64,000 bases of DNA, from assembly GCA_044892505.1 (NCBI GenBank), contig CM097882.1, positions 442,742,001 through 442,806,000 on the forward strand, written 5' to 3'. This DNA is from Schmidtea nova. Taxonomy: Eukaryota. Under the pieces are notes generated by a model that was given only the letters and a program-made list of their open reading frames with translations, did no database searches and was not told the origin of the DNA. A program made the translations under genes and the position numbers. Position 1 is the stretch's first letter. The number at the start of each line of letters is the position of its first letter. Of this stretch, positions 11 through 41,352 are shown piece by piece.

Positions 11-520
11 TTGATAAAGGCTAGAAAAATGAAGAAACCGGGAAAGAAATTAGTTTCAAAGAAAGTATTTACAAAGAAAACAAAGAAACCAGTTTCAAAA
101 ACTAGTTATACACCATCTAAAAAATTACTTATTGATAATATCCCAAAAAGTAATCGTATTCAAAATACTTACAAACCAAATCCAAAACAAATACATCATC
201 GTAGTTTCTCATTTTTCAACGCATTACTTAAAGCCCCTAGTATTAGAAGAATGAGTATTTTACAATCGTTTCCTAATTACGTTATTGACGATTTACTAAT
301 GATTTTAATTAAAGTTGTTAGAGGTAAAATCAATATAAGTGAATCTAATAGAAGAGTTTTGAACAAACACAAGAAACCATTGTTATCACTTGTAAAAACC
401 AAAAATAGAAAATTAATGCGTAAAATAATATATAAACAACAAGGAGGGTTTATTGCAGCATTGTTACCATTAGCATTATCACTATTAGGAGGTGCTGGTT
501 TATTAGGAAAACAGTCATAA
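11..520 (+). CDS. Basic Polinton/adintovirus protein with C-terminal QQGGFIAALLPL motif (putative virion core protein); first ATG at 30
   Basis: K/R-rich ORF ending in HKKPLLSL...YKQQGGFIAALLPLALSLLGG, a pattern recalled from small conserved Polinton proteins. It lies directly upstream of the integrase. Confidence 0.65.
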   Translation: MIKARKMKKPGKKLVSKKVFTKKTKKPVSKTSYTPSKKLLIDNIPKSNRIQNTYKPNPKQIHHRSFSFFNALLKAPSIRRMSILQSFPNYVIDDLLMILIKVVRGKINISESNRRVLNKHKKPLLSLVKTKNRKLMRKIIYKQQGGFIAALLPLALSLLGGAGLLGKQS

Positions 521-575
521 ACAATGGGACAATCATTGCCTAATCTTAATTTAAACTTTAAATCTTCTTGTTGTA

Positions 576-1623
576 ATGGAGAAGATTTGGACCAACCCAA
601 AACACGAAGCAGGTTTCGGTGGAGTCGAAAAGCTAAGCAAAAATGTATTGAATTCGAAAAAACAGACTCAAAGTTGGTTATCGGGGCAACTTGCATACAG
701 TCTAAACAAACCGATGCTGAAACGGTTTCCGACTCGAGCATATAAAACATATAGAATTAATGATTTGTGGCAAATGGATTTGATGGAAATGATTCCGTAT
801 TCAAAAATTAACAAGGGATACAAGTATATTTTAACATGTATTGATGTTTACAGTCGTTTCGCTCGAGCTATTCCAGTAAAATCTAAATCTGCTAATGATA
901 TGGCAATCGCAATCAAAACAATGATGAAAAAGGATCGTCCAACTAATTTACAAACTGATTTGGGTAAGCTAATAAATATTTTATATAATGATAATTATTT
1001 ATCCAGGTAAGGAATTTTACAATAGCAAAGTCAAAGAAATTATAAAGGGAATCAATCATTACTCAGTATTCTCTCAATTCAAAGCCGCTCATGTTGAAAG
1101 ATTTAATCGTACATTACGAGATCGTCTCAAAAAGTATTTTGTGCATCAAGGGAATAAAACATGGATTAATGTTTTACCACAAATTATTCATAGTTATAAT
1201 CATTCTGCTCATCGAGGTATAAATGGAAAGAAACCTGCTGAAGTAGTTGATACTGAAAATATTTTGAGTGATACAAAAATAAAGAAACCAAAATATAAAA
1301 TAGGTGATCATGTTCGAATTAGTAAAATTAGCGCATCGCCATTCATTAAAAATTTTGATAGTAATTGGAGTGATGAGGTATTTCAAATATCGAAAGTCAA
1401 CACAGTCCAGAATCCTGTCATGTATACTATTTCTGATTCTGATAACAATATAGTCAGTGGAAAATTCTATAAACAAGAATTACAAGTTATTCCCCCTCCG
1501 ACAATATTTAGAATTCAAAAAATATTGAAAACTAAAATGGTCGGTAAAGATAAACAATACTACGTCAAGTGGCATGGATATAAAGAACCATCATGGATAT
1601 CGTCAAAAAACCTAGTAAAGTGA
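576..1623 (+). CDS. int: Polinton integrase (rve DDE plus C-terminal chromodomain), two exons 576-963 and 1007-1623, 334 aa
   Basis: Motifs WQMDL (D), spliced LQTDLGKEFY (D), HVERFNRTL (E), YKIGDHVRI, and the chromodomain YYVKWHGY. Removing the GT-AG intron 964-1006 joins the two listed ORFs in frame. Confidence 0.92.
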
Positions 1624-2997: not shown

Positions 2998-4214
2998 TTT
3001 GCGGTAAATCTGAATTATGTCTTTTTGATCGACCATCTCCCCAAGCAGTTATTGAATATGGGGTGTTTGAAGAGGTGTTTCCAATGAATTCCATTACAGA
3101 TAGTAGAAATGATATCGAATTTTACATTAACGGTTCACAAACCGAATATTTAGATTTGAATGATACTTTATTATTCGTTACTGTCAAAGTTGTAGATAAA
3201 GATAAAAAACAATTAGCTGATGCTAGTGATGTAGTACCTAATAATTACCTGTTTCATACACTTTTCAAAGATGCAATTCTTGGATTTAATAATATAAAAG
3301 TTGAAGGTGGAAACAATACATATGCGCACAAGGCAATAATTGAAACTATTTTAAATTATACTAGTGATGCAAAAGAAACTTGTCTTACTCCAATGGGATA
3401 CGGCGCATCTGACGATAGAAAAAAGTGGATTAAAGGATCGAAACTTTTCAACATGTGTTCATCATTACAACTAGATTTTTTGGATCAACCTAAATATTTA
3501 CTTCCGGGAGTTAATGTACATATTAGATTGAAGAGATCTGATTCTGCATTATCATTGGCATCTACAGCTGGGAAACCAATAATATAAATAGTAGATGCAA
3601 AATTAATGGTACGAAGAGTTCGATGTGAATCTTCAGTATTAGCTGGACATCAAATTGGATTAAATAACAAACATGCAATTTATCCGATAAAATCAAAAGA
3701 AATTGTATCTTTTGCAATCGGTAAAGGGGCATCATCATTTTACAAGGAGCAAATATTTGGAGATAGAAGAATGCCTAATTTCATTCTTGTAGCTTTTCAA
3801 ACTGAAAATCAATATAACGGATCTTATTCTGCTTCTTCATCTACATTCAAACATTTCAATGTAACATCATTATCTCTGTCAAAAAATACAGATTATCGGG
3901 AAACTTATAATCAAGATTTTGAAAATGATAATTTTAGTGCCACATATATGCAAAGTCTTGTCCGGAATTTAGGATATTTGGATAAAAACTTGAATTGTGG
4001 TATAAGTCTAGATGAATTTAAATCAAGTTATCCATTCTTTACGTTTGTTCTTGCTCCTGATTTCGATTTGAATCAAAGTCAAATCCCTCAAAATGGAAAT
4101 TTACGATTAGATATCAAATTTGGTAAAGCCATTGAGGAACCGGTTCATGTAATAATATATGGAGTTTTTGAAAATGAAATCCAAATTACTGCAAATCGAA
4201 CAGTATTAGTTTGA
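2994..4214 (+). pseudogene. Major capsid protein (double jelly-roll; PY-type) with one in-frame TAA at 3585-3587
   Basis: Motifs KSELCLF, IEFYINGSQTEYLDLNDT, YLLPGVNVHIRLKRS, MPNFILVAF, GNLRLDIKF. ORFs 2994-3587 and 3606-4214 are in the same frame (612 nt apart) and separated only by the stop. Confidence 0.85.
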
Positions 4215-4279: not shown

Positions 4280-4662
4280 ATGGAGTAAGATTTTAATTTG
4301 TAAAAATAATTAATTAAATTAGTTCAATTCAGGTATATAGACTTGGCAAAAAACTATTGGGAAATCAATTTATTGGAGTTTATCCCTTAGATAAAATTCC
4401 TTATCTGGATGTTAATCAAGCTATCATCGTAAATACTCAGACATCTACTTTGGGTGGTGAACATTGGATTGCTGTTTACGTTAAACCAGATCGAATATAT
4501 GCATTTGATCCATTTGGATGTTATTATCCCAATTTATTAGTTAGTAAATTGCAAACTTTGGGTAAACCGATTGTATACAATAGAATTCGATATCAACATC
4601 CATTAACAATTACTTGTGGTCAACATTGTCTTGCATGGTTATTATCCATGTTAAATGTATAA
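4280..4662 (+). CDS. pro: Adenain-like cysteine protease, two exons 4280-4284 and 4323-4662, 114 aa
   Basis: Catalytic pattern GEHW (H), FDPFG (D), YQ (Q), TCGQHC (C). Splicing 4285-4322 gives MDSIQVYRLGKKLLGNQFIGVYPLDKIP, a family-typical N-terminus. Confidence 0.85.
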
Positions 4663-4694
4663 ACAATTTAATAAAAATAAAATTTAGTATAAAA

Positions 4695-5081
4695 ATGACT
4701 TGTTATTTTATTGATTTTATAGGAATTTACAATAATGGAAGATTAATTATTAATGAATTATGTATTATAAACGTTAATAATATTTTTAGACCTAAATATT
4801 ACATATATAATAAAGTTTGTAGTGAGTGGTATGAGGAGGAAGATTACTTTTGTCCAACATGTATTATGAAAGATATTGAAGATAGTAATGCTATTTTCTA
4901 TGTCACGGATATGGATAAACTTATTGCTTTGAAGAAATATTTTCCCACTTTGAGACTAATCAAATATAATTTAAAAGAAATTGAAGATGTTCCAGATAAT
5001 ATTTCTTGTCCCTATAGAGACCATAGTATGTGTGCCTATAAAGAATGTTTGCGTAGTGTTATAGATTATTTAAAGTCATAA
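4695..5081 (+). CDS. Degenerate DEDD/DnaQ-like exonuclease-fold protein, probably inactive
   Basis: FIDFIG..IINELCII resembles the Exo I pattern but lacks the Glu; C-terminal CPYRDHSMCAYKEC cluster resembles small Polinton exonuclease-like ORFs. ATG at 4695 and a polyA signal near 5097. Confidence 0.5.
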   Translation: MTCYFIDFIGIYNNGRLIINELCIINVNNIFRPKYYIYNKVCSEWYEEEDYFCPTCIMKDIEDSNAIFYVTDMDKLIALKKYFPTLRLIKYNLKEIEDVPDNISCPYRDHSMCAYKECLRSVIDYLKS

Positions 5082-5483
5082 ATATATTGTTATTTCAATA
5101 AATTTATTTCATTGTATTAATGTCTTTTATTATTATTATTTAATGAATATTATTATTTGCAAACTAACAAAGTTAACAAAGACTAGATAAAGTCGACAAT
5201 GACGTCAGAGGTCATGAACTCACATGTCTTTATGAATTCACATGGAAACTGACATGACATCATATGTTATATTGACACACATACTAGTATTATAAACACG
5301 TCAGTGTAATAACCATAAAGAAATATATGTGTGCGTATATTTCTCTCACCTAAAACGTATTTGATTGGCCGGTAAATAACCGTTGAAATATTTTAGTTAT
5401 ATACACTATCTTTTCATTTTTCATCACTTTTTAACAACCAATTTTACTATTGCATTCAATTTAATTAAAATCTCTCAATCAAC

Positions 5484-5966
5484 ATGCTGAATAATATTAA
5501 AAATATAACAAAGAAGAATGTCGCCGCCATGGGTAATTTTATTTTTTATTTTATTATATTATCTTTAAATTATTTCAATTTTCAGCAGCTTCGAATGATT
5601 CCAAGTTGAAGTATGAAGCCCCAGTAAATATTGTTTTAGGGCAAAATGGTATTTATTTTTATTTTAAATATATTTTTTAAAATTTAAAATTTTAGAAATT
5701 CGACAAGTTAAATCAAATTTATTCAGACCGATAGACCAACGCGGACGCATTTTTCCCGCTGATATTGATGCCGAATATACTAATGGTAATTTATTATTTA
5801 ATATTATATATTGTTATTTTAGAAATTATTTTAGAAAATAATGACGAATGTAGAAAATCGTCGAAACAATTTAATAATAATGATGAAGATATGCCAAAGA
5901 ATTCGGAGGAAATATATAATATTTCGGATGATGATGATATTTTGAATGAAAATGAATCTGATAAAT
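5484..5966 (+). CDS. Hidden spliced gene of unknown function: exons 5484-5532, 5586-5648, 5696-5785, 5823-5966 (3' end unresolved)
   Basis: Three AT-rich GT-AG introns (53, 47, 37 nt), all phase 1. The spliced frame is open for 115 codons (MLNNIKNITKKNVAAMAASNDSKLKYEAPVNIVLGQNEIRQVKSNLFRPIDQRGRIFPADIDAEYTNEIILENNDEC...ESDK), and a strong GTAAGT donor follows at 5967. Confidence 0.75.
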
Positions 5967-6714
5967 GTAAGTTTTTATTCTATTTTTATAGCATTTTGAA
6001 ATACCTTTTTAATTTTATAATATATAATTAATAATTTTATAATATGTAATAAATGATTTTCTTAATATTAATAATAATAATTTTACTANNNNNNNNNNNN
6101 NNNNNNNNNNNNNNNNNNNNNNNNNNNNNNNNNNNNNNNNNNNNNNNNNNNNNNNNNNNNNNNNNNNNNNNNNNNNNNNNNNNNNNNNNNNNNNNNNNNN
6201 NNNNNNNNNNNNNNNNNNNNNNNNNNNNNNNNNNNNNNNNNNNNNNNNNNNNNNNNNNNNNNNNNNNNNNNNNNNNNNNNNNNNNNNNNNNNNNNNNNNN
6301 NNNNNNNNNNNNNNNNNNNNNNNNNNNNNNNNNNNNNNNNNNNNNNNNNNNNNNNNNNNNNNNNNNNNNNNNNNNNNNNNNNNNNNNNNNNNNNNNNNNN
6401 NNNAAATAATTTATGATATTATTTTAATAATTTTAAACTATTTAAGATATTTCAAGACATATCATAGTAAATTCGTTACTATAATATTTCTTCAAATATT
6501 TTAAACTTACTATTTCAAGTTATTTTTATAATAATAATAATAATTTACGTTATCTCACGATGAAATCGAGATAATGTACAAATATTTTATAATACTATTT
6601 TAATTCAATTTTAATTGTATAATTTTAATTTTATATTCTATTTTAATAATAATAATAAACATTTTATAATTTTCTCCTGTATATTCAGGCTCTCTATACC
6701 CTAAATATTGCAAC

Positions 6715-9700
6715 ATGTCAGGTAGACACAGCACTCAATGTCACAAACTCATGACTGTTTATTATCGTCAGAAGTTTAATGGCATTGATTACTATATATG
6801 TCCAAAATGTGAGACTTCACAATCCCTACCCTACTCTGATTTTTATTCTAAACATCATGAGCATCTTACACAATTTTTCAAATCGAAAAAACTTATTTTT
6901 AAAAAATGTAAAAATCAATCTTCTTCGTCGATTAAGGTATCTACTGAGAAATCGTCTTCGGTTAAAATTTCGTCGAATAATGTATCTGTTGATAATTCTT
7001 CTAAGAATAAATTACTCAATAATTTATTAAATAATTCAGACGTTCAAATTATTAATATAAATAATAATAATAATAATAATATCAAGAAAAGACCTGCTGA
7101 TAAAATTAAAATTATTGCACCTAAAAAATATAAACCAGAAGTAATTATAATTAGCGACGATGAGGAAATTATTAATCAAATAGGAGGATCTATTGATATC
7201 GACGATGAGCCTGTAGTGGAAAAAGACTTAAGGGGATCTCGACGCTCGTTAACTTTTAATGTTGAATCCCATAATATTAATCAAATTGCTGTCACAGAAA
7301 AAATTTCTGTGCGGTTAAATAAAGAAATTATCAAAATGGGGAACGTAAAAATTCAATTCGCCCTTAATATTGAATTTGAAAAAGATGGGGTCTTTAAGAA
7401 TGAATTTTTGTCCACTAAAGCTGAGATCTTTTCAGATAATTTCTTAATAGAAAGCATTAGGAAATTAAATAATAAAATAGAAAATTTTACACAACGGGGT
7501 AGCGGCTGGATTGTTAATAAAATAATGGAAATCCATTTTATTTTGACAAAAATTTCTACCATGAATCGATTATCTGGCCACGGACATTTTGAAACTCCTA
7601 GCCCATTAAAAAATAAAAGGGCAATTATAAATGTAAAAAATTCAGATGATTTATGTTTTATATATAGTGTTTTGGCTATAACAAAATATAATTTAATCGT
7701 TAATAATCATAGTTCAGCCTCGAGTTATGTACCGTATTTAAATGATTTAGTTTTTGACCCTTTAAAAGACTGTCCCATGAAATTATGTAATATCCCTAAA
7801 TTCGAAAATAATAACCCTGGCTTAGCCATTAATGTGCTATCTTATAACCCTAAAGTGATTAGAAATAACAATATAGATATAGAAGATGATGATTATGTTC
7901 CTCATCATCCCCACTTGGAAATAATCCATCGCACAAAATTAAATCATTTAAACCCTATTTATCTTTTATTATTAGAAGATAAGGGAATTTTCCATTATAC
8001 TGCAGTTATTAATCTGCAAAGGTTAATGAACAGTAGTATAAATAGTACAGTTACCAATAGGATTCAGTCGATATGGTGTCCCAGATGTTTAAACGGTTTC
8101 CGTATTCAGGAAACCTTTGATAAGCATTTTAATTTATGTAAAAATAATCAAATAGGTGCAACCCTTTATAGTCTACCAAAAAATAAATATTTAGAATTTA
8201 AGGACTATTCCAAAACCGTAACCCCACCTTTCGTAATTTATGCTGACTTTGAGTCAATTTTACCGGGTGATGACAGGTATCACCAAAAACATTTACCGAT
8301 ATCAGCAGGTCTATTACTTTTAAATAATTTAAATAATTCAAAATCATATTATGAATTTATAGGTCTTGAATGTGTGTTAGAATTTTTAAAGAAAGTGGAG
8401 GAAATTGCTGTCACAATAGTACTCCCGTATTATGATTTATTCGGAAATACTCCATTAGGGCCTTTATCATTTGCTGAGCAGGAAGCTTTTAGGACTTGTT
8501 CAAATTGTTATTTATGTAAGAAACCAATTAGAAATAGAGTTCGTGATCACGATCACTTTTCCGGTAGATATCTTGGCGCTGCTTGCAACATTTGTAATAT
8601 TTCCCGTAGAATTAGAAAACACTTACCTGTTATTTTTCATAATTTGAAAGGTTATGACCTACATCACATTTTGAAGTATGGTCTGTCTGATTGTTCATCT
8701 TGGGAATTAAATATTATTCCGACTACTACAGAGAAATTTATTTCTCTTATAGCTCACATTGATAAACTTGCTGTTAGGTTTATTGACAGTTATCAATTTG
8801 TATCAGAGTCTTTAGGTAATGCGGTTAAAACTCTGTCAGTTTTTCCCTTAACATCTTCAGTTTTCACTGGTTCAATTATGGATTGTAAGGGTATTTTCCC
8901 TTTTAATTTTGCTACGAGTCTTGAAGTCCTAGAATCCACTCTTGAATTGCCTCCGATTTGGGCTAAGGTGTCTGAGGCTGATTATTTACGAGCTCAACAA
9001 ATTTGGACTGAAAATAATTGTCTCAACTTGTTAGACTATATGAAGGTTTATCTAAAGTTGGATGTATTTCTTCTAGCGGATTACTTTCAACAATTTCGAG
9101 CTAAGTCCATTGCTCACAATGGCTTAGATCCCTTAAATTTTTATGGTATTCCCGGTATGAGTTGGGCATCTGCTTTGATGACTTTGAAGGAACCCATTGA
9201 ACTCCTTCAAGACATGGAAATGTATAATTTCTATGAGGGAGGAATACGGGGTGGTTTGACATTCGTCAACAAAAAGTATGTAAAGACTGATGATGACACT
9301 GAGCTTTTATATATAGATATTAATAATCTATATGGTTGGGCTCTTAGCCAAAATCTTCCTTTTAGTGATTTTAGGTGGGTACATAATGATCTTGATAATA
9401 TCTTGACCGAATGCATGTCGACGGATATTGATAATCTTTCATATGGTTACACTATGGAAGTTGATATCATTGTTCCTGAAAACATGCATGTGTTTTTGGA
9501 TGATTTCCCTGTTGCTCCGGAAAAGATGTACCCACCAGGTTCGAAAGTTGACAAGTTAATGCTTACACATTATCCGAAGTATAACTATGTCATACATTGG
9601 AGACTGTTGAAGATGTTTGTTTCTCTTGGGGTTCAGGTAGTTAAAATTCATAGAGCGATTAGATTTAAGCAATCGAAAATCTTTAAGGCTTACATCGATA

Positions 9701-10662
9701 CGAATACTCAGTTAAGAGCAAACTCTACCAATAAACTCGATAAAAATTATTTTAAACTCAATAATAATAGCCTATATGGTAAATCCGTCGAAAATCTGAA
9801 AAAACGGATGAATTTGAGATTATGTAATTCATCTGAAAAGATGATTATATATGCTTCAAAGCCGTCTTTCAGAAAGTCCATCAAAATTGATGACGATCTG
9901 ATTGCAGCACATCTGAATAAAGATTTAATATGCTTAGATAGACCTAGTTATATCGGTCAAACGGTACTAGATCTATCTAAGCTGCGGATGTATCAACTGC
10001 AATATATTGAATTGCAGAAATATAGGGACCTCTTTGATTGTAAGATAGGAATTGTCGCTGGCGACACTGACTCGTTCTTTCTTGAGGTTAGACACTGTAA
10101 ACTTGATGTTCTCTTACCAGCTATGATTTCTGATGATCTTTTAGATACATCAAACTATGATCCAGACCATCCATTATATTCACGACGTCTCGACTCTGTT
10201 ATAGGGAAATTTAAGGATGAAAGTAAAGGTCATAGATATGAGGAATGGGTTTTCTTGCGTCCTAAATGTTATAGTCTTCTTGGTGATGCTGAATATAACA
10301 AAGCCAAAGGGATTACACTTGGCGAGACTGAAATAAAACATCAATCTTATCTTGACTGCTATCTAAATGACCGGATAATAACTGTTCCTCAAACGCGTAT
10401 AGGAACTAAAAATCACCAGCTTTATACGATAAAAAATACAAAAATAGCTCTTAGCAATAATGACGACAAGCGCGAATGGGTGGGGAGAAATGCAAGTCTC
10501 GCATTTGGTCATTATTTAGGAATCAATGCTAGAACCTATGACGATAACATTCCACCGAATCAATTACCGGATGAATTACCAAGTCAAATCAATGTGTCAA
10601 ATAACTATACCGATTATCCGTACGATTTCGGTGAATGGGCTGATCCCTTTGAAAGAACTTAA
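6715..10662 (+). CDS. polB: Protein-primed family B DNA polymerase (pPolB), intact, 1315 aa
   Basis: Exo motifs YADFES, HNLKGYD, YLKLDV; polymerase motifs YIDINNLYG, KLNNNSLYGK, GDTDS; also GIRGG, RPKCYS, KAKG. Carries a Cys/His-rich EndoVII-like segment (CYLC..RDHDH..GAACNICN). Confidence 0.97.
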   Translation: MSGRHSTQCHKLMTVYYRQKFNGIDYYICPKCETSQSLPYSDFYSKHHEHLTQFFKSKKLIFKKCKNQSSSSIKVSTEKSSSVKISSNNVSVDNSSKNKLLNNLLNNSDVQIININNNNNNNIKKRPADKIKIIAPKKYKPEVIIISDDEEIINQIGGSIDIDDEPVVEKDLRGSRRSLTFNVESHNINQIAVTEKISVRLNKEIIKMGNVKIQFALNIEFEKDGVFKNEFLSTKAEIFSDNFLIESIRKLNNKIENFTQRGSGWIVNKIMEIHFILTKISTMNRLSGHGHFETPSPLKNKRAIINVKNSDDLCFIYSVLAITKYNLIVNNHSSASSYVPYLNDLVFDPLKDCPMKLCNIPKFENNNPGLAINVLSYNPKVIRNNNIDIEDDDYVPHHPHLEIIHRTKLNHLNPIYLLLLEDKGIFHYTAVINLQRLMNSSINSTVTNRIQSIWCPRCLNGFRIQETFDKHFNLCKNNQIGATLYSLPKNKYLEFKDYSKTVTPPFVIYADFESILPGDDRYHQKHLPISAGLLLLNNLNNSKSYYEFIGLECVLEFLKKVEEIAVTIVLPYYDLFGNTPLGPLSFAEQEAFRTCSNCYLCKKPIRNRVRDHDHFSGRYLGAACNICNISRRIRKHLPVIFHNLKGYDLHHILKYGLSDCSSWELNIIPTTTEKFISLIAHIDKLAVRFIDSYQFVSESLGNAVKTLSVFPLTSSVFTGSIMDCKGIFPFNFATSLEVLESTLELPPIWAKVSEADYLRAQQIWTENNCLNLLDYMKVYLKLDVFLLADYFQQFRAKSIAHNGLDPLNFYGIPGMSWASALMTLKEPIELLQDMEMYNFYEGGIRGGLTFVNKKYVKTDDDTELLYIDINNLYGWALSQNLPFSDFRWVHNDLDNILTECMSTDIDNLSYGYTMEVDIIVPENMHVFLDDFPVAPEKMYPPGSKVDKLMLTHYPKYNYVIHWRLLKMFVSLGVQVVKIHRAIRFKQSKIFKAYIDTNTQLRANSTNKLDKNYFKLNNNSLYGKSVENLKKRMNLRLCNSSEKMIIYASKPSFRKSIKIDDDLIAAHLNKDLICLDRPSYIGQTVLDLSKLRMYQLQYIELQKYRDLFDCKIGIVAGDTDSFFLEVRHCKLDVLLPAMISDDLLDTSNYDPDHPLYSRRLDSVIGKFKDESKGHRYEEWVFLRPKCYSLLGDAEYNKAKGITLGETEIKHQSYLDCYLNDRIITVPQTRIGTKNHQLYTIKNTKIALSNNDDKREWVGRNASLAFGHYLGINARTYDDNIPPNQLPDELPSQINVSNNYTDYPYDFGEWADPFERT

Positions 10663-15568: not shown

Positions 15569-16170
15569 GTGATGGAATTTCTTTTAATATCTTAGTTAAC
15601 AATTTTTTTAAAATATTTATTTTTTTTAATTTTTGTGATGTAAATACAGCTAATTCTGTTTTTACACGATAAAAAGCACACGAAGGCTCTGTATCCAAGA
15701 TTCATGACCGCTGGTAGTTAGAGTAACCTGTTAAATTTCCTCATGAAATTCAGATAGTATTGTATCATTAGCAATAATTATAGCTAGATATCGTTAAAAA
15801 GCTCATTTAAATTTAACTTGGAATTATTAATAGCTATTTTATAACATTTATAGCAGCTCTTCTATAAAGTTCTCAATTCATAATTGTTTTTCATTGTTCA
15901 TATTTAAACAATATCCAATGCGCAGTGTAGCAAATTTGGCTTAGAGCAAAGGTATATTTAGGCAGATTATATTACTTAATATCTTCATTTCACAAAAGAA
16001 ATCTATTTTCTATTGTCTTGTTCACTCTATAACTATTTAAACCAAATTAACAACGATTACCTCAAATGACCTTGAATTCAATTACATGACGTCATTACAT
16101 GTATGCTGCGTGAAAGGGATGGTAAATGTTACGTAATGATTGTATAATAACATGTGTTACGACAAATCCG

Positions 16171-18321: not shown

Positions 18322-19280
18322 AGAACGCGCGTTTCACGCGCGTTCAATGCGTACTGTGATTTGTCTTATACAACAAGGAAGAAGAACGCGCGTTTCACGC
18401 GCGTTCAATGAGTACAGTAATTTGTCTTAAACACACACACAAGTTATCTGTGTACAAAAAATTATTATTATTAAAAGTTATATTTCATTAGTCTTTGTTT
18501 CTTTGCATTCACTTTGCAAAGTCTTTGTTAATATGCACGTGCATTGCAATGTCTTTGTTAATATTTGTTTTTGTTGATGAGTCATAACAATGAGTCATAC
18601 CAATGAGTCATACCGATGAGTCATGTAGATGAGTCATACTGATGAGTCATACTGATGAGTCATACCAATGAGTCATACTGACGAGTCATGTAGATGAGTC
18701 ATCCCAATGAGTCATCCAAATAAATCATACCGATGAGTCATTAAGAAAACAATTTAATCTTCAATGGTATGACCATTTTACTCACCCTTCAATTACCTTT
18801 TGTTTGATGTAAGGATTAAAAAGGTTGAAGGTTTTTGACCCTTTCAAGGTTCAGGACCCTCCATACATCTTCGAAAGTATGACCATCATACTTACCTCTC
18901 AATTACCTTTTGTTTGATATATAACTTGTAAGGATTGTAAAATGTTAAAGGTTTTTGACCCATTGAAGGTTAAAGACCCTCCATAGACCTTCGTGGGTAT
19001 GACAATTGGATAAACCTCTCCAAGACCTTTCGAATAATACCCTTGTTTGAAGGTTAGACCTTATTTGACCTTTGGAAATTTAAAATTTGAATTGAGTCAT
19101 CGATGACGTCATAAAATTCAAATTTGAAATGAGTCATCGATGACGTAATCGATGAGTCATAACAAAGAAAAAATGAGTCATCGGGGGGGGCGGGGGATAT
19201 GGGTGACTCGTCGATGACGTCATTGTCTTTGTTTAACGATGAGTCATGGAGCACACTTCTGTCTACTATATATATATACT
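18322..19280. repeat. Candidate Polinton terminal inverted repeat arm ending ...CTACTATATATATATACT
   Basis: Terminus reads 5'-AGTATATATATATAGTAGAC on the minus strand (AG..CT type end). Includes TGAGTCA and TGACGTCA arrays, a G-run and internal duplications. The partner arm is not in the window. Confidence 0.5.
18578..18740. repeat. 13-bp-period minisatellite, 13 units, 11 with a perfect TGAGTCA (AP-1) site
   Basis: Counted directly: TGAGTCA starts at 18578, 18591, 18604 and so on to 18734. Confidence 0.9.
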
Positions 19281-21753: not shown

Positions 21754-23244
21754 TTATTTTTTGAATTTTAACTTCCGGAAGTCACGAGAAATATAGGATA
21801 GGTACATGATGAGTCCACTTATTGCTATAATAATACCTACAACAAAAAAGGTAATATTGTAAGACAAAGTCATGTCATATATCCATCCAGAAATCGGTGG
21901 ACCGATAAAAACTCCTATTCCTTGATTGACAAGAATTACACCTAATGTCGCATCTAAATTTTTCAAACCGAAAAGGTCAATCAGTATGACAGATGAAAGG
22001 GTCATGACAGGTCCACTCATAGTTCCATATATGAAATTGTATATAATCATAAAAATATAAGTATTCATTATCCAACTGAAGCTTAAAACTAATCCACTCA
22101 AAACAAGTGTCATATTATACAGATGAAATCGGTTTACACCTCTAAATGTTGCCAAGTACCCAAATCCTAACCTTCCACATAAATTTCCAATACCAATTGA
22201 GGCAATTAAATGACTTGCTTTGCTGGTTGAAATTCCAGATAGTAAAGCTCTATCTTTAGTAAACATATAGGGGGTATCGAATCCAATACTTGTTAAAAAA
22301 TTTGAAATAATGAATAATATAAAAACCGGATTTTTCAATAATTGTATAATTGATAGACTTGCATTTTCTTCAGGCTTTCTATCGACTTCATCTTCTAAGC
22401 ATTTATCAGTTTCATTTATCTCTTCTTCAGAAATATTAACGGAAGCAGGATTTACAATGTCTTGTTCACTGTGTTTTCCCTGAGGTTCCCGATTTTTAAA
22501 GGTCAGTGAAGAAAGTATCAAAGTGTATAATATCAGACTAAGGATCAACATGGTGAATTGCCATCCACGTTTTTCAATTAAAAATTCAATGAATGGACTA
22601 AAAATAAACGTTCCCAACCCCGATCCACAGATTGCGATTCCAAGAGCAAGAGATCTTTTCTTTTCGAACCAAACATTGACAATAATTATGGACGGCAAAT
22701 ACATTAACCCAAAACCTATAGAACTTAATACTGAACTAGACAATATTAAAACCCATAATTTATCGCAGAAATAAGGTATGGTGAAACCTAGGGCCCCAAG
22801 AAAGGCACCAGCAATTGCGACAGATCTATAACTAAATTTACTACATAAGTAACTTGATACGGGTGCCATGCAACATGTTATTGCAATGATCAATGACCCC
22901 ATGAAACCCACATTAGACCGGGATATATTGAAATATTTAATGAACTCCGGTGTAAAAACTCCATAGGAAAATAAAACTCCATCCACAACTAAATTGCTAA
23001 AAAAACAAGCAACTACCACAACCCAACCCCATCCTTGATCAGGTGGATGAATCTTTTCATTTTTCTTAAGCAGTTTCTCTTCTGTCTGTGTTTCTACTTG
23101 ATTTTTATCCCTACCCTCAAGGATTTCATTGATAATCATTATCTTACAACATTCAACCTCTTGTTTTATATCTTGATTTACATCTATTTTTTCTAAGTTA
23201 TTTTCAGTAATTTTTATAGTGCAATTTTTTTCATTAGACATCAT
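21754..23244 (-). CDS. Monocarboxylate transporter (SLC16/MFS), single exon, 496 aa
   Basis: Signature PPDQGWGWVVVVACF, WFEKKRSLALGI, two bundles of hydrophobic helices with a polar central loop, and GRLGFG. Confidence 0.93.
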   Translation of the reverse strand: MMSNEKNCTIKITENNLEKIDVNQDIKQEVECCKIMIINEILEGRDKNQVETQTEEKLLKKNEKIHPPDQGWGWVVVVACFFSNLVVDGVLFSYGVFTPEFIKYFNISRSNVGFMGSLIIAITCCMAPVSSYLCSKFSYRSVAIAGAFLGALGFTIPYFCDKLWVLILSSSVLSSIGFGLMYLPSIIIVNVWFEKKRSLALGIAICGSGLGTFIFSPFIEFLIEKRGWQFTMLILSLILYTLILSSLTFKNREPQGKHSEQDIVNPASVNISEEEINETDKCLEDEVDRKPEENASLSIIQLLKNPVFILFIISNFLTSIGFDTPYMFTKDRALLSGISTSKASHLIASIGIGNLCGRLGFGYLATFRGVNRFHLYNMTLVLSGLVLSFSWIMNTYIFMIIYNFIYGTMSGPVMTLSSVILIDLFGLKNLDATLGVILVNQGIGVFIGPPISGWIYDMTLSYNITFFVVGIIIAISGLIMYLSYISRDFRKLKFKK

Positions 23245-26099: not shown

Positions 26100-29000
26100 T
26101 TATAGTTCGCTGATGTCATGTATTTTCGAAATACACAATTTCCTAAACTCTTTTGGTAAGAGTATTCTTGGTGTATTTTCATTGCTGACATCGTACCAAA
26201 GTTCATTGATTTTCTCTAATTTCAGGCTGTGTTTTAGGGGGAGTTCTTTTAAGGTTTCTGATTGTTTGTTTTTAATTTTTTCGTTTTCAAATAGTTCGCC
26301 AAATTCTAGTGCGTTTATGTCTGTTTCTATTCTTGACAGAGTATCTGCTGCGATATTTGCGGCGCCAGCGACATAATTGATTGTGCAATTAAATTGTGAT
26401 GTATAATTTAATTGTCTTATTTGTCGTGGTGATGGGTTTTTCATTTGTATCGCGTTTGTTAACGGTTTGTGGTCCGTATATATTTTGAAGTTTCTTGCTT
26501 CCAGAAAGTGTTGGAAGTGTTTGATGGCTTCATGTATCGCGAGTAATTCTCGGTCAAAGGTTGAGTACCGTGTTTGATGTGTTTTTAGTTTTTTAGAGAA
26601 AAACCCGATTGGCTGTTTGCTGTATTTGTTATCTTGATATAAGGTTGCGCCCATTGCATATCCAGAGCAGTCTGTTGCTAGGTTGTAGTCTAGTTCTGGA
26701 TTTGGATATCCGAGTAATGTTGCTTGGGATAAGCTTGTTTTTGCTTTTTCAAACTGTTTGGTAGTTTGTTCGGTCCAGTTTATTTTATTATTTCTTCTTG
26801 TTTTGATCAGGTCGTTTAATGGAGCTAACAATTCACTGCAGTTAGGGACGTACGCGTGGTAAAAGTTTACCATCCCCAAAAATCGTCTTAACTCTCTGTT
26901 TGTGTTCGGTAATTTGAACTCTTGTATCGTGCTTATTTTCTTGTCTATTGGCTTCGTGCCTTTTTCGTCCTGTGTGTGTCCCAGAAAATTAATCTCTTTT
27001 TTCAAAAATTCGCATTTTTGAATGTTTATTTTGAGATTTGCGGAGTTCAGCGTTTCAAACACCTTTTCAATGTCTTTTAAGTGAGTAGTTTTGTTTGGGC
27101 TTGCTATGAGGATGTCGTCCAAATAAGCTATTGTGTTCTGGTTATTTTTCAAAGTCTTGTCCATAAATCGTTGAAATGTTGCAGCTGCGTTTCGCAAACC
27201 AAATGGCATTCTGTTGTACTAGAACATGCCGATTGGTGGTACGATTGGTGTTTTTTTAATGTCTTCGTTCCTGATGGGTATTTGGTGGTAAGCCTTCTGT
27301 AAATCTATTTTCGAGAAGAGTTTTGCTCCTTTTAATCTGTTTATTATGTCTCTGATGATAGGCAGCGGGTAGTTGTCTGGTTCCGTGATTTTGTTGAGCA
27401 TTCGGTAGTCGCCACAAGCTCTCCATTCCCCGTTTGCCTTTTGTTTGAGCATGAGTGCTGAGGACCAATCAGAGTTCGAGTGAGTTACTATTTTGTTTTC
27501 TAGTAACTCCTTGAAAATTTCGTTCGTAATTTTTGTTTTTTGTGGATCTAGTTGTCTCACCTTTGCATGCACTGGGTTTCCGTTTGTTATGATTGCATGT
27601 TCGGTGCAGTGATCCGCGTTTTTGTCAAAGGTTACTGGTTCGGTGAGTTTTTCGAATTTTCCCAGTAGTTTATTTATTTCTGGGTCATGATTCAATTTTG
27701 TTTTTGTTTATTGTTAGGTGAACCCGTTTGGATAACACCGATGTCTATTTTTGGTTTTCCTCCATTGCTTGTGTTGTGCTGTGGTGTTGTAGTATTAGTA
27801 ATATTTTCTATTATTTGTTTGTTTTTACAATCCACTAGGAGGTTGTAATTTGTTAGGAAATCTGCTCCTATTATTGCTTGTTGGACCTCAGCTATGGTGA
27901 ATGTCCAGTTGTAGTTCTTTTTATTTATGTTTAAATTTATTTTTTGTTGCCCGAAAGTTTTTATGTTTGTGCCTTTAGCTGCTGTTAATGGTTTTTCTGT
28001 TTTGTTGACACTTTTATACATAGAATGGGGCAGTAGTGAGGTCACCAAGCCGGTGTCTTTTAAAAAATCTATGTTGTTTGTGTGCACCCAAAATGTGTTG
28101 TTTTTGTCACCTGATGTGGGTGCTATCATTGGTGACCTTATTGGTTTCCCTGCTCTGTTTTATTGAATTCGCAGGGTTGTGTGCATTTAAATGCTTTTTC
28201 ACCGAATTTGTTGTGGAAATAGCATAGGTTTTTGTTTAGGAATGTTTCTTGAATCTCTTTCTGGATTTCTGTTTCGGTAATTGTTGCATCGATTTGGGGA
28301 GTTTGATCGATTTCTGTAATTGTTGTTTGGTGATTGACTGCGGCTGTAGTTTTGTCTGTTGTATTCTAGGGGTTGATTGTAGCATTGTCTGTTTTGACCG
28401 TTGGATGTTTGGTCTCTGTTGTGGTTGTATCTGTTGTAATTATCGTATGATTGTGTTGAGTTAAAGTTTGGTTTGTTACAACGTTCGTTTATTTCGGCTA
28501 GTTCTGTTTTGATTTGTTTGTTTTCGACTATTATTTCGTCGAATTGGCCGATAAGAGTGTTTAGTAGGTTGTTCATGTTTTCGTTTTGTTCGTTATTTTT
28601 GTTGTATGAAGGGTTATTGTAGTTAGTTTTGTTTTTGTTGTGGTTTTGGGTGCTGCATATAGTCGAATAAATTTCCTCGTTGATTTTATCCGCTATGTCG
28701 GCAAGCGTTTCAACATCAGCGTTGTTGCTGGCTGCCAGAATCCTCCTGATTTCTGGTGGCATTGCTCGCATGAAAAATTCTTTTACTAGTTCGTTTGAAC
28801 CCGAATTTGTGATATTTGGTTGCAAATATTCTAGTTTTTGTTTTCATTGCCTGAGGAAATCAATGGGTTTTTTGTCACCTAATTGAGGCAAGATTCGAGC
28901 ATTTGCCGTCTGTTTATTTTATTTTTGATTGTAAGGATCTTACACAGTTTCTTAAAGGGGTCGTCATCCTTAGAAATTTCTTCAATCTGATCCGCTATTT

Positions 29001-29630
29001 CATTTAGTTTGTTACTGGGTAGTGCAGCTATGATTTTGGAGCACAGAGTTTTTGTGGATTTTATACCTGAAAGGGTTAGTGTTAATTTGGCAAATTCCAG
29101 CCATTTTTGTGGAGTGCCATTTTCGTCAGTGAAGTAGTTTGGTAGGTTGGGTTTCGGGTTAATTACAGAGTTTATGGTGTGTGTGTTTTCGGGGTTGTAA
29201 TAGTAGTTGTTGTTTTGGTGTTGGGATTGTGCATTTTCGTTGTCAATGGGTGTTTGGGTAATATTTGTTTGGTTTAGTTGGTTGGTTGCCATCGCTTTTA
29301 TTTATGTGTTGCTTGTTGATGCGAAAAAAATCGAGTTTGTTTCAAGGATATGGCTTACTGTGTTCAGCCAAAAGATCTCACCTTCCTTTATAGTTCTATA
29401 CTAACTATTCTAAAAGGAAAAGGTGATTTGAGAAAAATTTCGTCGAGTGTGTGTGTGTGTGTGTTGACTTCTGACACCAGTTGTAAATGCGATATTTACT
29501 TGTTTCGAATGGCTTTAGAGTAAGATATTACGGATATGTACAAGGAGAAATGTAAGCGCCCGAGAGAGTCAGCCCGATTATTGTGGGGACACTCGGGGTG
29601 TATGCTATGTAATGCGGGAAGGAAATAACA
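26100..29630 (-). mobile_element. Decayed Ty3/gypsy retrotransposon: 5' LTR, PBS, gag, protease, RT, RNase H; integrase and 3' LTR missing
   Basis: Gag in two frames (28879-29292, 28199-28825); protease FLKDTG; RT CGDYRMLN, FSKIDLQKAYHQI, MPFGLRNA, YLDD; RNase H ATDCS, RELLAI, YTDHKPL. Several frameshifts; the sequence breaks at the start of the integrase zinc finger (KIHDISEL). Confidence 0.92.
29467..29479 (-). other. Primer-binding site TGGTGTCAGAAGT (tRNA-Leu type)
   Basis: Lies 2 nt downstream of a TGTTATTT...TTTACA LTR candidate (29482-29630). The sequence matches the recalled tRNA-Leu 3' end complement TGGTGTCAGAAGTGGGAT over 13 nt. Confidence 0.7.
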
Positions 29631-39381: not shown

Positions 39382-41352
39382 CGGAGCGGGACATTTCAGT
39401 CTCGCCGTTTCAGTCCTGGTCAAATCAGTCCCGTCTGCTTCAATCCCAACCAATGCAAATAAATTACTTCAAATAACATTTAATGACATAAAAAACAGTC
39501 AGAGGTTATACATGTTGATAAAAACTCTCAAAGACATCTACATAAAAACTCTCAAAGTATTAGCATAAAAAATCAATGCAAATAGATAACTTTTAATAAC
39601 ATTTAATTACATAATAACATTTAATGACATAATATGACATATATGTTGATAAAAACTCTCAAATACATCTAGATGAAAACTTTCAAAGTTATTGCATAAT
39701 GAAATTGTGCGCCAATCCTCGAAGATACTCTACGATGTCACGTTTGTTGTAGGTGGACACTAAGTTGTAAATTCTATCATCAGCTTGTATGTACTTGCGT
39801 CTCTTTGCCGGTGCTGGAGTGCCTGCCACATACGCCTCGTAGACGACATCTCGCCCCTTCTGGACGCATCGTAGCCCATCAATAAAGCGCCAAATTGAGG
39901 GATGAGAAATGTCGAGCTCCGTCTGAAGTCTTCGATGTGCAGCCTCCGCGTGAATGTTTGTGCGGTCCTGGTTATTTAGAACGCGATCATAGACATTCCA
40001 CAATGGGGGCGGAAAGGAAGGAGCACGTCGTATGCGATTGCGTCCAAAGCGTCTACCAAGGTAACTATCTTCGAGCCAATTGAGGATGGGCTGTAGTTCA
40101 TCATGAAGTTCTTCTGTGAGTGTATCGAAAGCGACATCTAGGTTGACGATGGGAACGAATGCGATAGCAATGATCATCCGGGCCTGCAGTGAAAACATCG
40201 TATCATTATCGTAACAATTAAGCAAACCTGCAGCACGTAAATGTACTCTAAAGTTCTTCATTAAGTGGAACAGGCATCCTCGGAGAACAGCTGAAGGGAA
40301 ATTAGCACGGACTGCGTTTTTAACAGCCATTTCTAAGTCAAGTGAGATGAACGACGGATTGAATTGAGGCCAGAGTTCTTTAATGATTCTGAACAACCTA
40401 TCGTATGTAACTTGCTGCTTGTTCCCAAGGAGGGCATACAGCACAGGGAAGACATATCTACCACATTTAGCCAACACCACGAAGACCTGCTCAAAGAGTG
40501 GTGGAGCTAAACTGAACGTGCCGTCTATGAACACTTCATCCATCTGCTGACTCCAGCGTATATGGCTTTCACGTCCAAATAGAATTATTCGGTTAACATC
40601 ATCCTGTTCTGTGTTACCTAGTACAAAGCGTTCCTGCTCTCCTGGAACTGACTCGTACATTCGATATTCATCGGGAATTATTAGTTGGGTTAAGTTTGTT
40701 GGATTTGCTGGAGCCATGGCCAATCGATTTCTGATCCTTTGAATAACCTTCCTGTTTGCATCTTTATTTGGCATCTGACCCATCGTTGCTAGATCGATGC
40801 CCTGGATGACATGGTTTATGATTTGTGCAGGTTGTTCTATTGTTTCATCGGCTCGCCTCTTTATCGATGTTTTAACTTTAACCACCTCAACTCGAGCAGC
40901 ATTGCTTCCGTGACTGTGACTCCCACTTCTATTGACTATGGCATCGTTAAAATCAGTGTGAATCCGGGCTTTGCATTGTCCCTGATTATCGCATCTCCAG
41001 AACTTCCTTTCTCCGTTTGCGCTCATTTTGCAGAAACTGAAAGGATGCCCTTCATCTGCCAACTTTTTACGTCCTCGTTGAGACTTCAAATCATCAGTCA
41101 TGACGGTTAGTTTAGTTAAAATTTAACGTTTTGCGAATTAATAAATGTCCTAATTCCTAATATTTACTAATACTAATGTTTTTGTTTACATTTGTCTAAG
41201 CGTGTTTTCGTTTTCTTTTCGTCACAATGTTTCATCCAAAATTATGCCTTAGGACTTAGGACTTAAACGGTCAGTATTGAAACAGTCGAGACTGATTTGA
41301 CGAGGACTAAATCGGCGGGACTAAAACGGCGGGACTGAATAGTCACGGACCG
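39382..41352 (-). mobile_element. Complete Mutator-like (MULE) transposon, 1971 bp
   Basis: Imperfect TIRs CGGAGCGGGAC.. / ..GTCACGGACCG with TCAGTCCCG-type repeats, and a perfect 9-bp TSD CAGAAGAGC (39373-39381 and 41353-41361). Confidence 0.93.
39689..41101 (-). CDS. FLYWCH-MULE DDE transposase, intact, 470 aa
   Basis: FLYWCH (FWRCD..CKARIHT..HSH), FIDGTF (D), SLDLE (D), CLFH, RTNIHAE (E). Confidence 0.92.
   Translation of the reverse strand: MTDDLKSQRGRKKLADEGHPFSFCKMSANGERKFWRCDNQGQCKARIHTDFNDAIVNRSGSHSHGSNAARVEVVKVKTSIKRRADETIEQPAQIINHVIQGIDLATMGQMPNKDANRKVIQRIRNRLAMAPANPTNLTQLIIPDEYRMYESVPGEQERFVLGNTEQDDVNRIILFGRESHIRWSQQMDEVFIDGTFSLAPPLFEQVFVVLAKCGRYVFPVLYALLGNKQQVTYDRLFRIIKELWPQFNPSFISLDLEMAVKNAVRANFPSAVLRGCLFHLMKNFRVHLRAAGLLNCYDNDTMFSLQARMIIAIAFVPIVNLDVAFDTLTEELHDELQPILNWLEDSYLGRRFGRNRIRRAPSFPPPLWNVYDRVLNNQDRTNIHAEAAHRRLQTELDISHPSIWRFIDGLRCVQKGRDVVYEAYVAGTPAPAKRRKYIQADDRIYNLVSTYNKRDIVEYLRGLAHNFIMQ

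What the first reader, a model, noticed from the sequence alone, without database searches (positions are those of the whole stretch)
5484..5966. Unannotated four-exon gene inside the virus; every intron is phase 1
The region looks intergenic in the ORF track, but removing three AT-rich introns gives an open 115-codon frame from an ATG preceded by a TGACGTCA (CRE) site at 5200-5207 and a reverse CCAAT. The internal exons are 63, 90 and 144 nt, all symmetric 1-1, so any can be skipped without a frameshift. No family is recognised; the C-terminal part is acidic.
Basis: partly seen in the sequence, partly recalled or inferred. Interest (0 to 1): 0.8.

Follow-up and report, generated by a model that had tools for sequence, protein, structure and literature searches.

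The report
Spliced coding exons upstream of Maverick polymerase
Four short exons split by tiny AT-rich introns inside an integrated Maverick/Polinton virus-like element look like real coding sequence with no known relatives. They probably form the spliced front end of the element's DNA polymerase gene rather than a complete gene, which is unusual because animal Mavericks are described as intronless.

Summary
The coordinates are right. The ATG is at 5484, the exons are 49, 63, 90 and 144 nt, and the three GT-AG introns are all phase 1. That gives 115 open codons plus one base, with no stop codon.

An open spliced chain alone is not rare here: about 23% of ATGs can be extended that far. What is rare:
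- the composition step (introns 4-9% GC, exons 24-38%);
- codon usage like the element's other genes (z 5.8; exons 2-4 in the top 0.1-0.7% of control open stretches).

No relatives were found for any exon.

The surrounding element is a Maverick/Polinton with integrase, adenain-like protease, a capsid-like ORF and a 1315-codon protein-primed polymerase.

Exon 4 ends at a consensus donor. The only visible acceptor that opens a long frame in phase 1 is at 6688, directly before the polymerase ORF. Polymerase coding there starts upstream of its first ATG. The split codon would be Cys, aligned with an invariant Cys in relatives.

Best reading (about 0.5): these are 5' coding exons of the polymerase gene. 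Main rival: a separate small orphan gene, with the polymerase's own first exon hidden in the N stretch. No transcript evidence exists.

The parts
576..1623 (+). Maverick integrase (rve core plus C-terminal chromodomain), context gene
   Evidence: Pfam rve scores 36.1 bits, above its cut-off. Chromo scores 23.3 bits, just below its cut-off. The core and the chromodomain lie in two reading frames, which is one frame change. A composition-only predictor places one intron-like segment within the gene's wider span.
3606..4214 (+). Capsid-like ORF (double jelly-roll-like), context gene
   Evidence: Pfam DJR-like_dom, E 1.8e-4, 21.3 bits, below the cut-off of 27. This is weak.
4357..4662 (+). Adenain-like cysteine protease ORF, context gene
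   Evidence: Pfam Peptidase_C5, 26.5 bits, above the cut-off of 21.3.
5097..5102 (+). AATAAA after the stop of the upstream ORF (4614-5081); possible end of the upstream transcription unit
   Evidence: Read. Inference only, because the motif is common in AT-rich DNA.
5200..5207 (+). TGACGTCA palindrome (CRE-like), within a cluster of TGAC/GTCA-like half-sites at 5198-5305
   Evidence: 4 in the window against 0.39 expected; overlapping palindromes and a 13-nt direct repeat. Function untested.
5364..5368 (-). Reverse CCAAT (ATTGG), followed by TATATA at 5398-5403
   Evidence: Read. The promoter-like layout is inference.
5484..5532 (+). Exon 1: ATG plus 16 codons plus 1 base, with A at -3
   Evidence: Its codon usage is not distinctive.
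5533..5585 (+). Intron 1: 53 nt, GT..AG, 9% GC, phase 1. A tandem CAGCAG acceptor gives a second in-frame option 3 nt later.
5586..5648 (+). Exon 2, 63 nt
   Evidence: top 0.1% of control open stretches.
5649..5695 (+). Intron 2: 47 nt, GT..AG, 4% GC, phase 1
5696..5785 (+). Exon 3, 90 nt
   Evidence: top 0.7%.
5786..5822 (+). Intron 3: 37 nt, GT..AG, 8% GC, phase 1. A second acceptor 12 nt later (exon start 5835) is also in frame.
5823..5966 (+). Exon 4: 144 nt, acidic, no stop codon; last base T in phase 1
   Evidence: top 0.2%.
5967..6688 (+). Proposed intron 4: donor GTAAGT, N stretch 6089-6403 inside, acceptor with 12 of 15 pyrimidines before CAG at 6686-6688. If the donor is not used, the frame reads through to TAA at 6029-6031, with AATAAA at 6048-6053.
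   Evidence: The flanks of the N stretch are 9.8% and 14% GC, in the lowest 0.3-3% of 120-nt windows. This is like the introns and unlike the 25-27% GC promoter-like region.
6689..10662 (+). Protein-primed family B DNA polymerase exon. Conserved coding starts at the acceptor, 26 nt upstream of the first ATG (6715).
   Evidence: 138 relatives, the best 55-60% identical, many carrying PF03175 and PF02945; the residues before the ATG align with the N-terminal Cys/His motif of relatives; 1324 codons are open after a phase-1 join.

Best explanation
The four exons are real spliceosomal coding exons of the integrated Maverick/Polinton element. Most likely they are the 5' coding exons of the transcription unit that continues into the protein-primed DNA polymerase ORF.

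Proposed sequence of events:
1. Transcription starts in the promoter-like stretch before 5484.
2. Three 37-53-nt AT-rich introns are removed.
3. The donor at 5967 is joined, directly or through an exon hidden in the N stretch, to the acceptor at 6688.

This would supply the start codon that the polymerase's conserved N-terminal Cys/His motif lacks. It would also add about 115 orphan residues, including an acidic stretch, in front of the polymerase's zinc-finger-like modules, giving about 1439 codons in all.

Shown: the exon structure, the coding-like statistics, the missing start for the polymerase's conserved N-terminus, and the phase and codon fit.
Inferred: the join itself, the promoter, and any function of the extension.
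For: Real exons:
- GC step of 4-9% in introns against 24-38% in exons.
- Only this locus and one other in the window pass an intron GC filter of at most 10%.
- Codon-usage z of 5.8 in the stated frame only.
- Exons 2-4 lie in the top 0.1-0.7% of 876 control open stretches.
- A composition-only predictor finds exactly these three introns. It finds 25 such loci on the whole plus strand.

Continuation into the polymerase:
- Exon 4 has no stop and ends at AAT|GTAAGT, exactly where GC drops to 9.8%.
- Of the acceptors visible after the N stretch, only the one at 6688 opens more than 14 codons in phase 1. It opens 1324 codons and has the best pyrimidine tract.
- The polymerase frame is open only from 6670. 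It has no ATG before 6715, yet the residues encoded before that ATG align with the N-terminal Cys-Cys-His-Cys pattern of P0016, P0017, P0021 and P0028.
- The codon that straddles the acceptor reads Gly as it stands. It becomes Cys with the T that ends exon 4, and it aligns with the invariant first Cys of that pattern.
- No ATG-started exon between 6404 and 6688 can feed the acceptor.
- Both flanks of the N stretch are intron-like in composition, not promoter-like.
- Some relatives have N-terminal extensions of 34-115 residues, and in P0032 and P0038 these have acidic runs before the same module.
Against: - Relatives that keep the Cys/His motif start with Met only 3-4 residues before the first Cys. 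The closest relatives start even later.
- None of the 120 listed relatives has anything similar to exons 1-4, so the extension would be lineage-specific.
- The joining intron would be 722 nt as written, against 37-53 nt for the others.
- 315 N hide what lies between and could hold the polymerase's own promoter and first mini-exon.
- The phase-and-T match has roughly a 1 in 8 chance of arising by accident.
- There is no transcript or protein evidence.
Confidence: 0.5

Rival explanations
1. This is a separate small orphan gene of the element. The four exons encode a protein of about 117-136 residues. It ends either by read-through of the 5967 donor to the TAA at 6029-6031, with AATAAA at 6048-6053, or in a last exon hidden in the N stretch. 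The polymerase has its own promoter and a tiny first exon (start codon plus 2-4 codons) inside the N stretch. Alternatively it is translated from ATG 6715 after a non-coding leader or spliced leader is joined at 6689.
For: - Relatives' polymerases begin with Met 3-4 residues before the first Cys, which is what a mini-exon would encode.
- Read-through gives a stop followed by AATAAA at a normal distance.
- Lineage-specific uncharacterised genes are usual in Mavericks: puORF in nematode elements (PMC10748475) and pz, pw and pm in vertebrate ones (PMC8097293).
- An acceptor 26 nt before an ATG is also what a leader-accepting site would look like (from my own knowledge).
Against: - The read-through tail is 9.8% GC, as AT-rich as the introns, and has neutral codon usage (-0.1 bits).
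- A full GTAAGT donor exactly at the composition step would be unused.
- The phase-1 and T-to-Cys fit with the polymerase acceptor would be coincidence.
- The visible 285 nt before the acceptor look like intron, not promoter.
Confidence: 0.32
2. This is not a gene. Either the chain is a chance product of flexible GT..AG choice in AT-rich DNA, or it is a decayed remnant that is no longer expressed.
For: - About 23% of ATGs in the window can be extended to the same coding length with three freely chosen introns.
- No relatives were found for any exon in Pfam, the word search or the full HMMER search of exon 4.
- Exon 1 is not distinctive.
- The 10% GC filter was chosen after seeing the finding.
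Against: - Three independent signals coincide at the same boundaries: the composition step, canonical splice sites and frame-specific codon usage.
- Exons 2-4 each lie in the top 1% of real control open stretches.
Confidence: 0.1
3. This is captured host sequence: a fragment of a host gene carried as cargo, with its own introns. It may have been fused secondarily to the polymerase unit.
For: - The introns are host-like, all in phase 1, flanking symmetric exons.
- Mavericks are known to carry host-derived cargo (bioRxiv 10.1101/2022.07.12.499685, title and abstract only).
- Intact vertebrate Mavericks are intronless (PMC8097293).
Against: - No similar sequence exists elsewhere in the window.
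- Exon 4 finds no protein among 1.84 billion representatives.
- Codon usage matches the element's own genes.
- The integrase span also holds an intron-like segment, so introns here are not confined to a possible cargo.
Confidence: 0.08

Closest known systems
Maverick/Polinton virus-like elements of animals (protein-primed polymerase, rve integrase, adenain-like protease, jelly-roll capsid)
   Same: The window carries a polymerase with PF03175-bearing relatives, an rve integrase with a chromodomain, a Peptidase_C5 ORF and a weak DJR-like ORF. All are on one strand and tightly packed.
   Different: Intact vertebrate Mavericks are reported as intronless (PMC8097293). Here a stretch between protease and polymerase is built of four short exons, and the polymerase's conserved N-terminus begins at an acceptor site without its own start codon.
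Lineage-specific uncharacterised Maverick genes (puORF of nematode Polintons, PMC10748475; pz, pw and pm of vertebrate Mavericks, PMC8097293)
   Same: An orphan coding region at a fixed place among the core genes, with no recognisable family.
   Different: Those are single ORFs that are conserved among copies. This one is spliced, has no stop codon and has no detected relative. I did not compare sequences with those genes.
Adenovirus E2B unit, where the polymerase and terminal-protein messages take their first codons from a small upstream exon (from my own knowledge, not tested here)
   Same: A protein-primed polymerase of a related virus lineage whose main ORF lacks its start codon and receives it by splicing.
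   Different: Here the upstream part would be four exons and about 115 codons, not a few codons. No transcript data exist and no sequence relation was tested.
Introner-bearing Maverick-Polinton-like proviruses of dinoflagellates (PMC11957031)
   Same: Spliceosomal introns inside genes of integrated Maverick-like elements.
   Different: Those introns are copies of a mobile introner family. The three introns here are 37-53-nt AT-rich segments, and no repeat copy was detected in the window.
Polymerases with an inserted HNH-type endonuclease domain (pPolB2 of nematode and oomycete Polintons, PMC10748475)
   Same: The polymerase here and many of its relatives carry an Endonuclease_7 (PF02945) match.
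   Different: In this window the match is below Pfam's cut-off (18 bits against 23.6). Membership of the pPolB2 class was not tested.

Membership tests
Maverick/Polinton element (context of the finding) | Protein-primed family B DNA polymerase | tested here: met
   The 1315-codon ORF has 138 relatives at E up to 0.001. The best are 55-60% identical, and many carry precomputed PF03175. The window's own ORF did not reach PF03175 in my Pfam scan.
Maverick/Polinton element (context of the finding) | Retroviral-type (rve) integrase | tested here: met
   rve scores 36.1 bits, above its 32.6 cut-off. The adjacent Chromo match scores 23.3 bits, just below 25.1.
Maverick/Polinton element (context of the finding) | Adenain-like cysteine protease | tested here: met
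   Peptidase_C5 scores 26.5 bits, above its 21.3 cut-off.
Maverick/Polinton element (context of the finding) | Double jelly-roll major capsid protein | tested here: inconclusive
   DJR-like_dom scores 21.3 bits, below its cut-off of 27.
Maverick/Polinton element (context of the finding) | Packaging ATPase; terminal inverted repeats with a target-site duplication | not tested
   No ATPase match was found among the ORFs scanned. The element runs off the left end of the window, so neither the ends nor a full gene set can be judged.
Spliceosomal multi-exon protein-coding gene | Canonical GT..AG bounds with an open frame across the joins | tested here: met
Spliceosomal multi-exon protein-coding gene | Exons distinguishable from introns and from non-coding open stretches | tested here: met
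   Exon 1 alone is not distinguishable.
Spliceosomal multi-exon protein-coding gene | A complete frame from start codon to stop codon | tested here: not met
   There is no stop within 5484-5966. The frame ends at a donor.
Spliceosomal multi-exon protein-coding gene | Spliced transcripts | not testable with these tools
   No expression data are available here.
5' part of the polymerase gene | Phase and frame fit between the exon 4 donor and the polymerase acceptor | tested here: met
   Phase 1 on both sides, and 1324 codons open after the join.
5' part of the polymerase gene | The polymerase needs an upstream coding exon | tested here: met
   Conserved residues lie before the first ATG, there is no ATG back to the upstream stop, and the codon at the acceptor aligns with an invariant Cys.
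5' part of the polymerase gene | Relatives share an N-terminal extension similar to exons 1-4 | tested here: not met
   No similarity to the 120 listed relatives. Those proteins are single-ORF calls, so spliced upstream exons would not show in them.
Any known protein family for the exon-encoded peptide | A significant profile or sequence match | tested here: not met
   Pfam is blank for exons 2 and 3. Exon 4 has only a chance-level match at E 0.15. The word search of 5825-6028 is blank, and the full HMMER search of exon 4 is blank. The exons were searched apart, and the joined peptide was not searched.
CRE/CCAAT/TATA-type polymerase II promoter | Motifs at plausible distances from the start | tested here: inconclusive
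   The motifs are present. TGACGTCA is enriched in the window as a whole, and the other three copies are outside the element. Function is not testable here.

The most novel reading that the evidence does not exclude
An animal Maverick has placed its protein-primed polymerase under host-style splicing. Four symmetric phase-1 exons of orphan sequence supply the start codon and an acidic N-terminal extension. Tandem and alternative in-frame acceptors, plus an optional read-through stop after exon 4, would let one promoter yield both a small acidic protein and one or more polymerase isoforms. This would be an arrangement like the adenovirus E2B unit, arising independently in an endogenous virus-like element.
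Probability: 0.2. Interest if true: 0.65.

Novelty: new variant of a known kind. Interest (0 to 1): 0.45.

Why it matters
Animal Mavericks are usually annotated by plain ORF calling and are described as intronless. That approach misses spliced coding parts and mis-places polymerase starts.

If these exons are spliced onto the polymerase, two things follow. The element depends on the host's splicing machinery for its replication gene. The polymerase also carries an unrecognised N-terminal part just where a priming or DNA-end-binding role has been suspected for such enzymes (my own knowledge, not tested).

If the exons are a separate gene, they are a new orphan accessory gene of a Maverick. Either way, the locus gives a concrete set of junctions that expression data could test.

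Tried and rejected
Searches that found nothing:
- Pfam scans of exons 2, 3 and 4 and of exon 4 with its read-through tail gave only a chance-level Rap1_C match at E 0.1-0.15.
- The word search with 5825-6028 found nothing.
- The full HMMER search of exon 4 against 1.84 billion representatives found nothing. Power is low for 47 acidic residues.
- Local BLASTP of each exon against the 120 listed polymerase relatives, and tblastn against the window, gave only chance hits.
- A word search with the polymerase's first 110 residues, including the residues before the ATG, was blank at database scale.
- The PDB sequence search with the polymerase was blank.
- Rfam on 5000-6800 was blank.
- Cluster look-ups gave no organism or names, so the host remains unidentified.
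- One literature search on spliced Polinton genes returned only unrelated papers.

Ideas rejected:
- An ATG-started exon between 6404 and 6688 that could feed the polymerase acceptor: none exists.
- A 26-nt intron after exon 4 leading to a stop two codons later: judged too short to be spliced.
- The introns as copies of a repeat family: there are no other copies in the window.

Steps left out by rule:
- The joined 115-residue peptide was not searched or folded. The exons were searched apart by reference.
- No DNA of related elements was fetched.
- The N stretch was neither filled nor looked up.

Slips, stated as required:
- In some searches I read two junctions between such pieces by eye and reasoned about their positions before stopping.
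- In my reasoning I also recalled from memory short motifs of an integrase and of the adenovirus protease.

Full report
**What is there**

The window is AT-rich (21-39% GC in 2-kb steps). Its first 10.7 kb carry, all on the plus strand:
- an rve integrase with a chromodomain;
- several unassigned ORFs;
- a weak double-jelly-roll-like ORF;
- an adenain-like protease ORF;
- a continuous 1315-codon ORF.

That ORF has 138 relatives at E up to 0.001. The best are 55-60% identical, and many carry the protein-primed polymerase family PF03175 and PF02945. The finding lies between the protease region and the polymerase. A 315-N stretch (6089-6403) separates it from the polymerase.

**The observation**

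Reading the sequence and translating each exon by reference confirms every coordinate.
- Exons: 5484-5532, 5586-5648, 5696-5785 and 5823-5966 (49, 63, 90 and 144 nt).
- Introns: three GT..AG introns of 53, 47 and 37 nt, all phase 1.
- Frame: 115 open codons plus one base.
- Exon 4 is acidic.

The model has no stop codon and ends at a full consensus donor, GTAAGT, at 5967. Two of the acceptors also have in-frame alternatives, 3 nt and 12 nt further on.

**Is it more than chance?**

The open chain by itself is not. With freely chosen GT..AG introns of 30-100 nt, about 23% of ATGs whose plain ORF is under 150 nt reach the same coding length. Four other signals are beyond chance.
- The introns are 4-9% GC and the exons 24-38%.
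- If introns must be at most 10% GC, only this locus and one minus-strand locus pass on both strands of the 64-kb window. That threshold was set after the fact.
- A predictor that uses only GT..AG, length and composition recovers these three introns. It finds 25 such loci on the whole plus strand and one in the 3.9-kb polymerase ORF.
- Codon usage trained on the element's other ORFs gives +23.3 bits in the stated frame against -18.8 and -8.8 in the other frames. This is z 5.8 against a composition-matched stop-free null.

Against 876 real open stretches of 25-90 codons elsewhere in the window, exons 2, 3 and 4 fall in the top 0.1%, 0.7% and 0.2%. Exon 1 is not distinctive. I take the exons as real coding sequence, with a probability of about 0.85.

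**Relatives**

None were found.
- Pfam is blank for exons 2 and 3 and gives only a chance-level match for exon 4.
- The word search with exon 4 plus its read-through tail is blank.
- The full HMMER search of exon 4 against 1.84 billion representatives is blank.
- The exons resemble neither the 120 listed polymerase relatives nor anything else in the window.

These searches were made exon by exon, by reference, so their power is low. The joined peptide was not searched.

**Where the frame goes**

- Before the N stretch, the only AG after the donor would make a 26-nt intron, which I judge too short.
- After the N stretch, six acceptor-like AGs are visible. Joined in phase 1 to the final T of exon 4, five of them hit a stop within 3-14 codons.
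- The sixth, at 6688, has 12 of 15 pyrimidines before CAG and opens 1324 codons, which is the polymerase.

Independently, the polymerase needs something upstream.
- Its frame is open only from 6670 and has no ATG before 6715.
- Yet the eight residues encoded before that ATG align with the N-termini of P0016, P0017, P0021 and P0028. Those relatives carry a Cys-Cys-His-Cys pattern ahead of the conserved Tyr-Tyr / Cys-x-x-Cys module.
- The codon that straddles the acceptor reads Gly as it stands and aligns with the invariant first Cys. With the T from exon 4 it would read Cys.
- No ATG-started exon between 6404 and 6688 can feed the acceptor.
- Both flanks of the N stretch are 10-14% GC, in the lowest 0.3-3% of 120-nt windows. 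That is like the introns and unlike the 25-27% GC stretch before exon 1.

**Against the join**

- Relatives with the motif begin with Met three or four residues before the first Cys, and the closest relatives begin later still. The simplest history is therefore a tiny first exon.
- Such an exon could lie in the N stretch together with the polymerase's own promoter.
- No relative shows an extension like exons 1-4. However, those proteins are single-ORF calls that would not include spliced exons.
- The joining intron would be 722 nt as written, far longer than the others.
- The phase-and-T fit alone has roughly a 1 in 8 chance.
- If the donor is not used, the frame runs 21 more codons to TAA at 6029-6031, with AATAAA at 6048-6053. 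That tail is 9.8% GC with neutral codon usage.

**Verdict on mechanism**

- Most likely (about 0.5): the exons are the 5' coding part of the polymerase transcription unit. They would supply its start codon and about 115 orphan residues, with an acidic run just before the zinc-finger-like modules. Acidic runs before the same module occur in P0032 and P0038, which is weak support.
- Next (about 0.3): a separate small orphan gene.
- Smaller shares: a chance or decayed chain, or captured host sequence.

The promoter-like layout is present but untested. It consists of TGACGTCA within a cluster of related half-sites, reverse CCAAT and TATATA, with AATAAA of the upstream unit before them. TGACGTCA occurs four times in the window against 0.39 expected, and three of those lie outside the element.

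**State of the context genes (counts only)**

- Polymerase: no interruption in 1315 codons, but no start codon for its conserved N-terminus.
- Integrase: the catalytic core and the chromodomain lie in two frames, which is one frame change. One intron-like segment is predicted within the gene's wider span, so this may be an intron rather than a break.
- Capsid-like ORF: preceded by a same-frame ORF with one stop between them. Whether they are one gene is not established.
- Protease: one ORF with the family match. One intron-like segment is predicted in the span around it.

**Comparison with the literature**

- Intact vertebrate Mavericks are reported as intronless (PMC8097293).
- Nematode elements have an uncharacterised ORF among the core genes, and polymerases with an HNH-type insert (PMC10748475).
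- Dinoflagellate Maverick-like proviruses carry introners (PMC11957031).
- A polymerase that receives its first codons from an upstream exon is known to me from adenovirus E2B. That is my own knowledge and was not tested here.

I file the locus as a new variant of a known kind: a Maverick with a spliced, orphan coding region that probably belongs to its polymerase gene.

**Limits and rule-bound omissions**

- No DNA of related elements was fetched.
- The N stretch was neither filled nor looked up.

Slips:
- I read two junctions between such pieces by eye and reasoned about their positions before stopping.

Noticed in passing
window 63058-63905, minus strand: A second, diverged polymerase fragment. 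It is 70.5% identical in DNA over 855 nt to 9497-10346 of the element and overlaps a 203-codon ORF. This second Maverick copy runs off the right end of the window, and its upstream part lies outside, so it says nothing about the exons.
   Followed up: partly
window 11-1623: The integrase core and the chromodomain lie in different frames. A composition-only predictor places one short AT-rich GT..AG segment in this span, so other genes of this element may be spliced too. No position is given here.
   Followed up: partly
window 16087-16094, 19104-19111, 19215-19222: Three further exact TGACGTCA palindromes lie outside the element. The total of 4 compares with 0.39 expected. Two are 111 nt apart and flank no gene that I identified.
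   Followed up: no
window 5580-5588 and 5818-5834: There is a tandem CAGCAG acceptor at intron 1 and two acceptors 12 nt apart at intron 3. Every choice keeps the frame, so small in-frame isoforms are possible.
   Followed up: no
window about 52434, minus strand: This is the only other locus in the window where an ATG reaches at least 346 coding nt through introns of at most 10% GC (470 nt). It is probably a spliced host gene next to the 516-codon ORF at 52995-54545.
   Followed up: no
window 26100-29292, minus strand: An LTR-retrotransposon-like pol region with RVT_1, RT_RNaseH and a weak DUF7041 match, split over several ORFs.
   Followed up: no
window 39689-41101 (minus) and 21754-23244 (minus): A FLYWCH-MULE transposase ORF of 470 codons and an intronless MFS transporter ORF of 496 codons. 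These are host or other mobile-element context.
   Followed up: no
window 6689-6900: The polymerase N-terminus has a Cys-Cys-His-Cys pattern followed by a Tyr-Tyr / Cys-x-x-Cys ... His-x3-4-His module. The module is repeated in some relatives. It looks like zinc fingers, but no Pfam family matched.
   Followed up: partly
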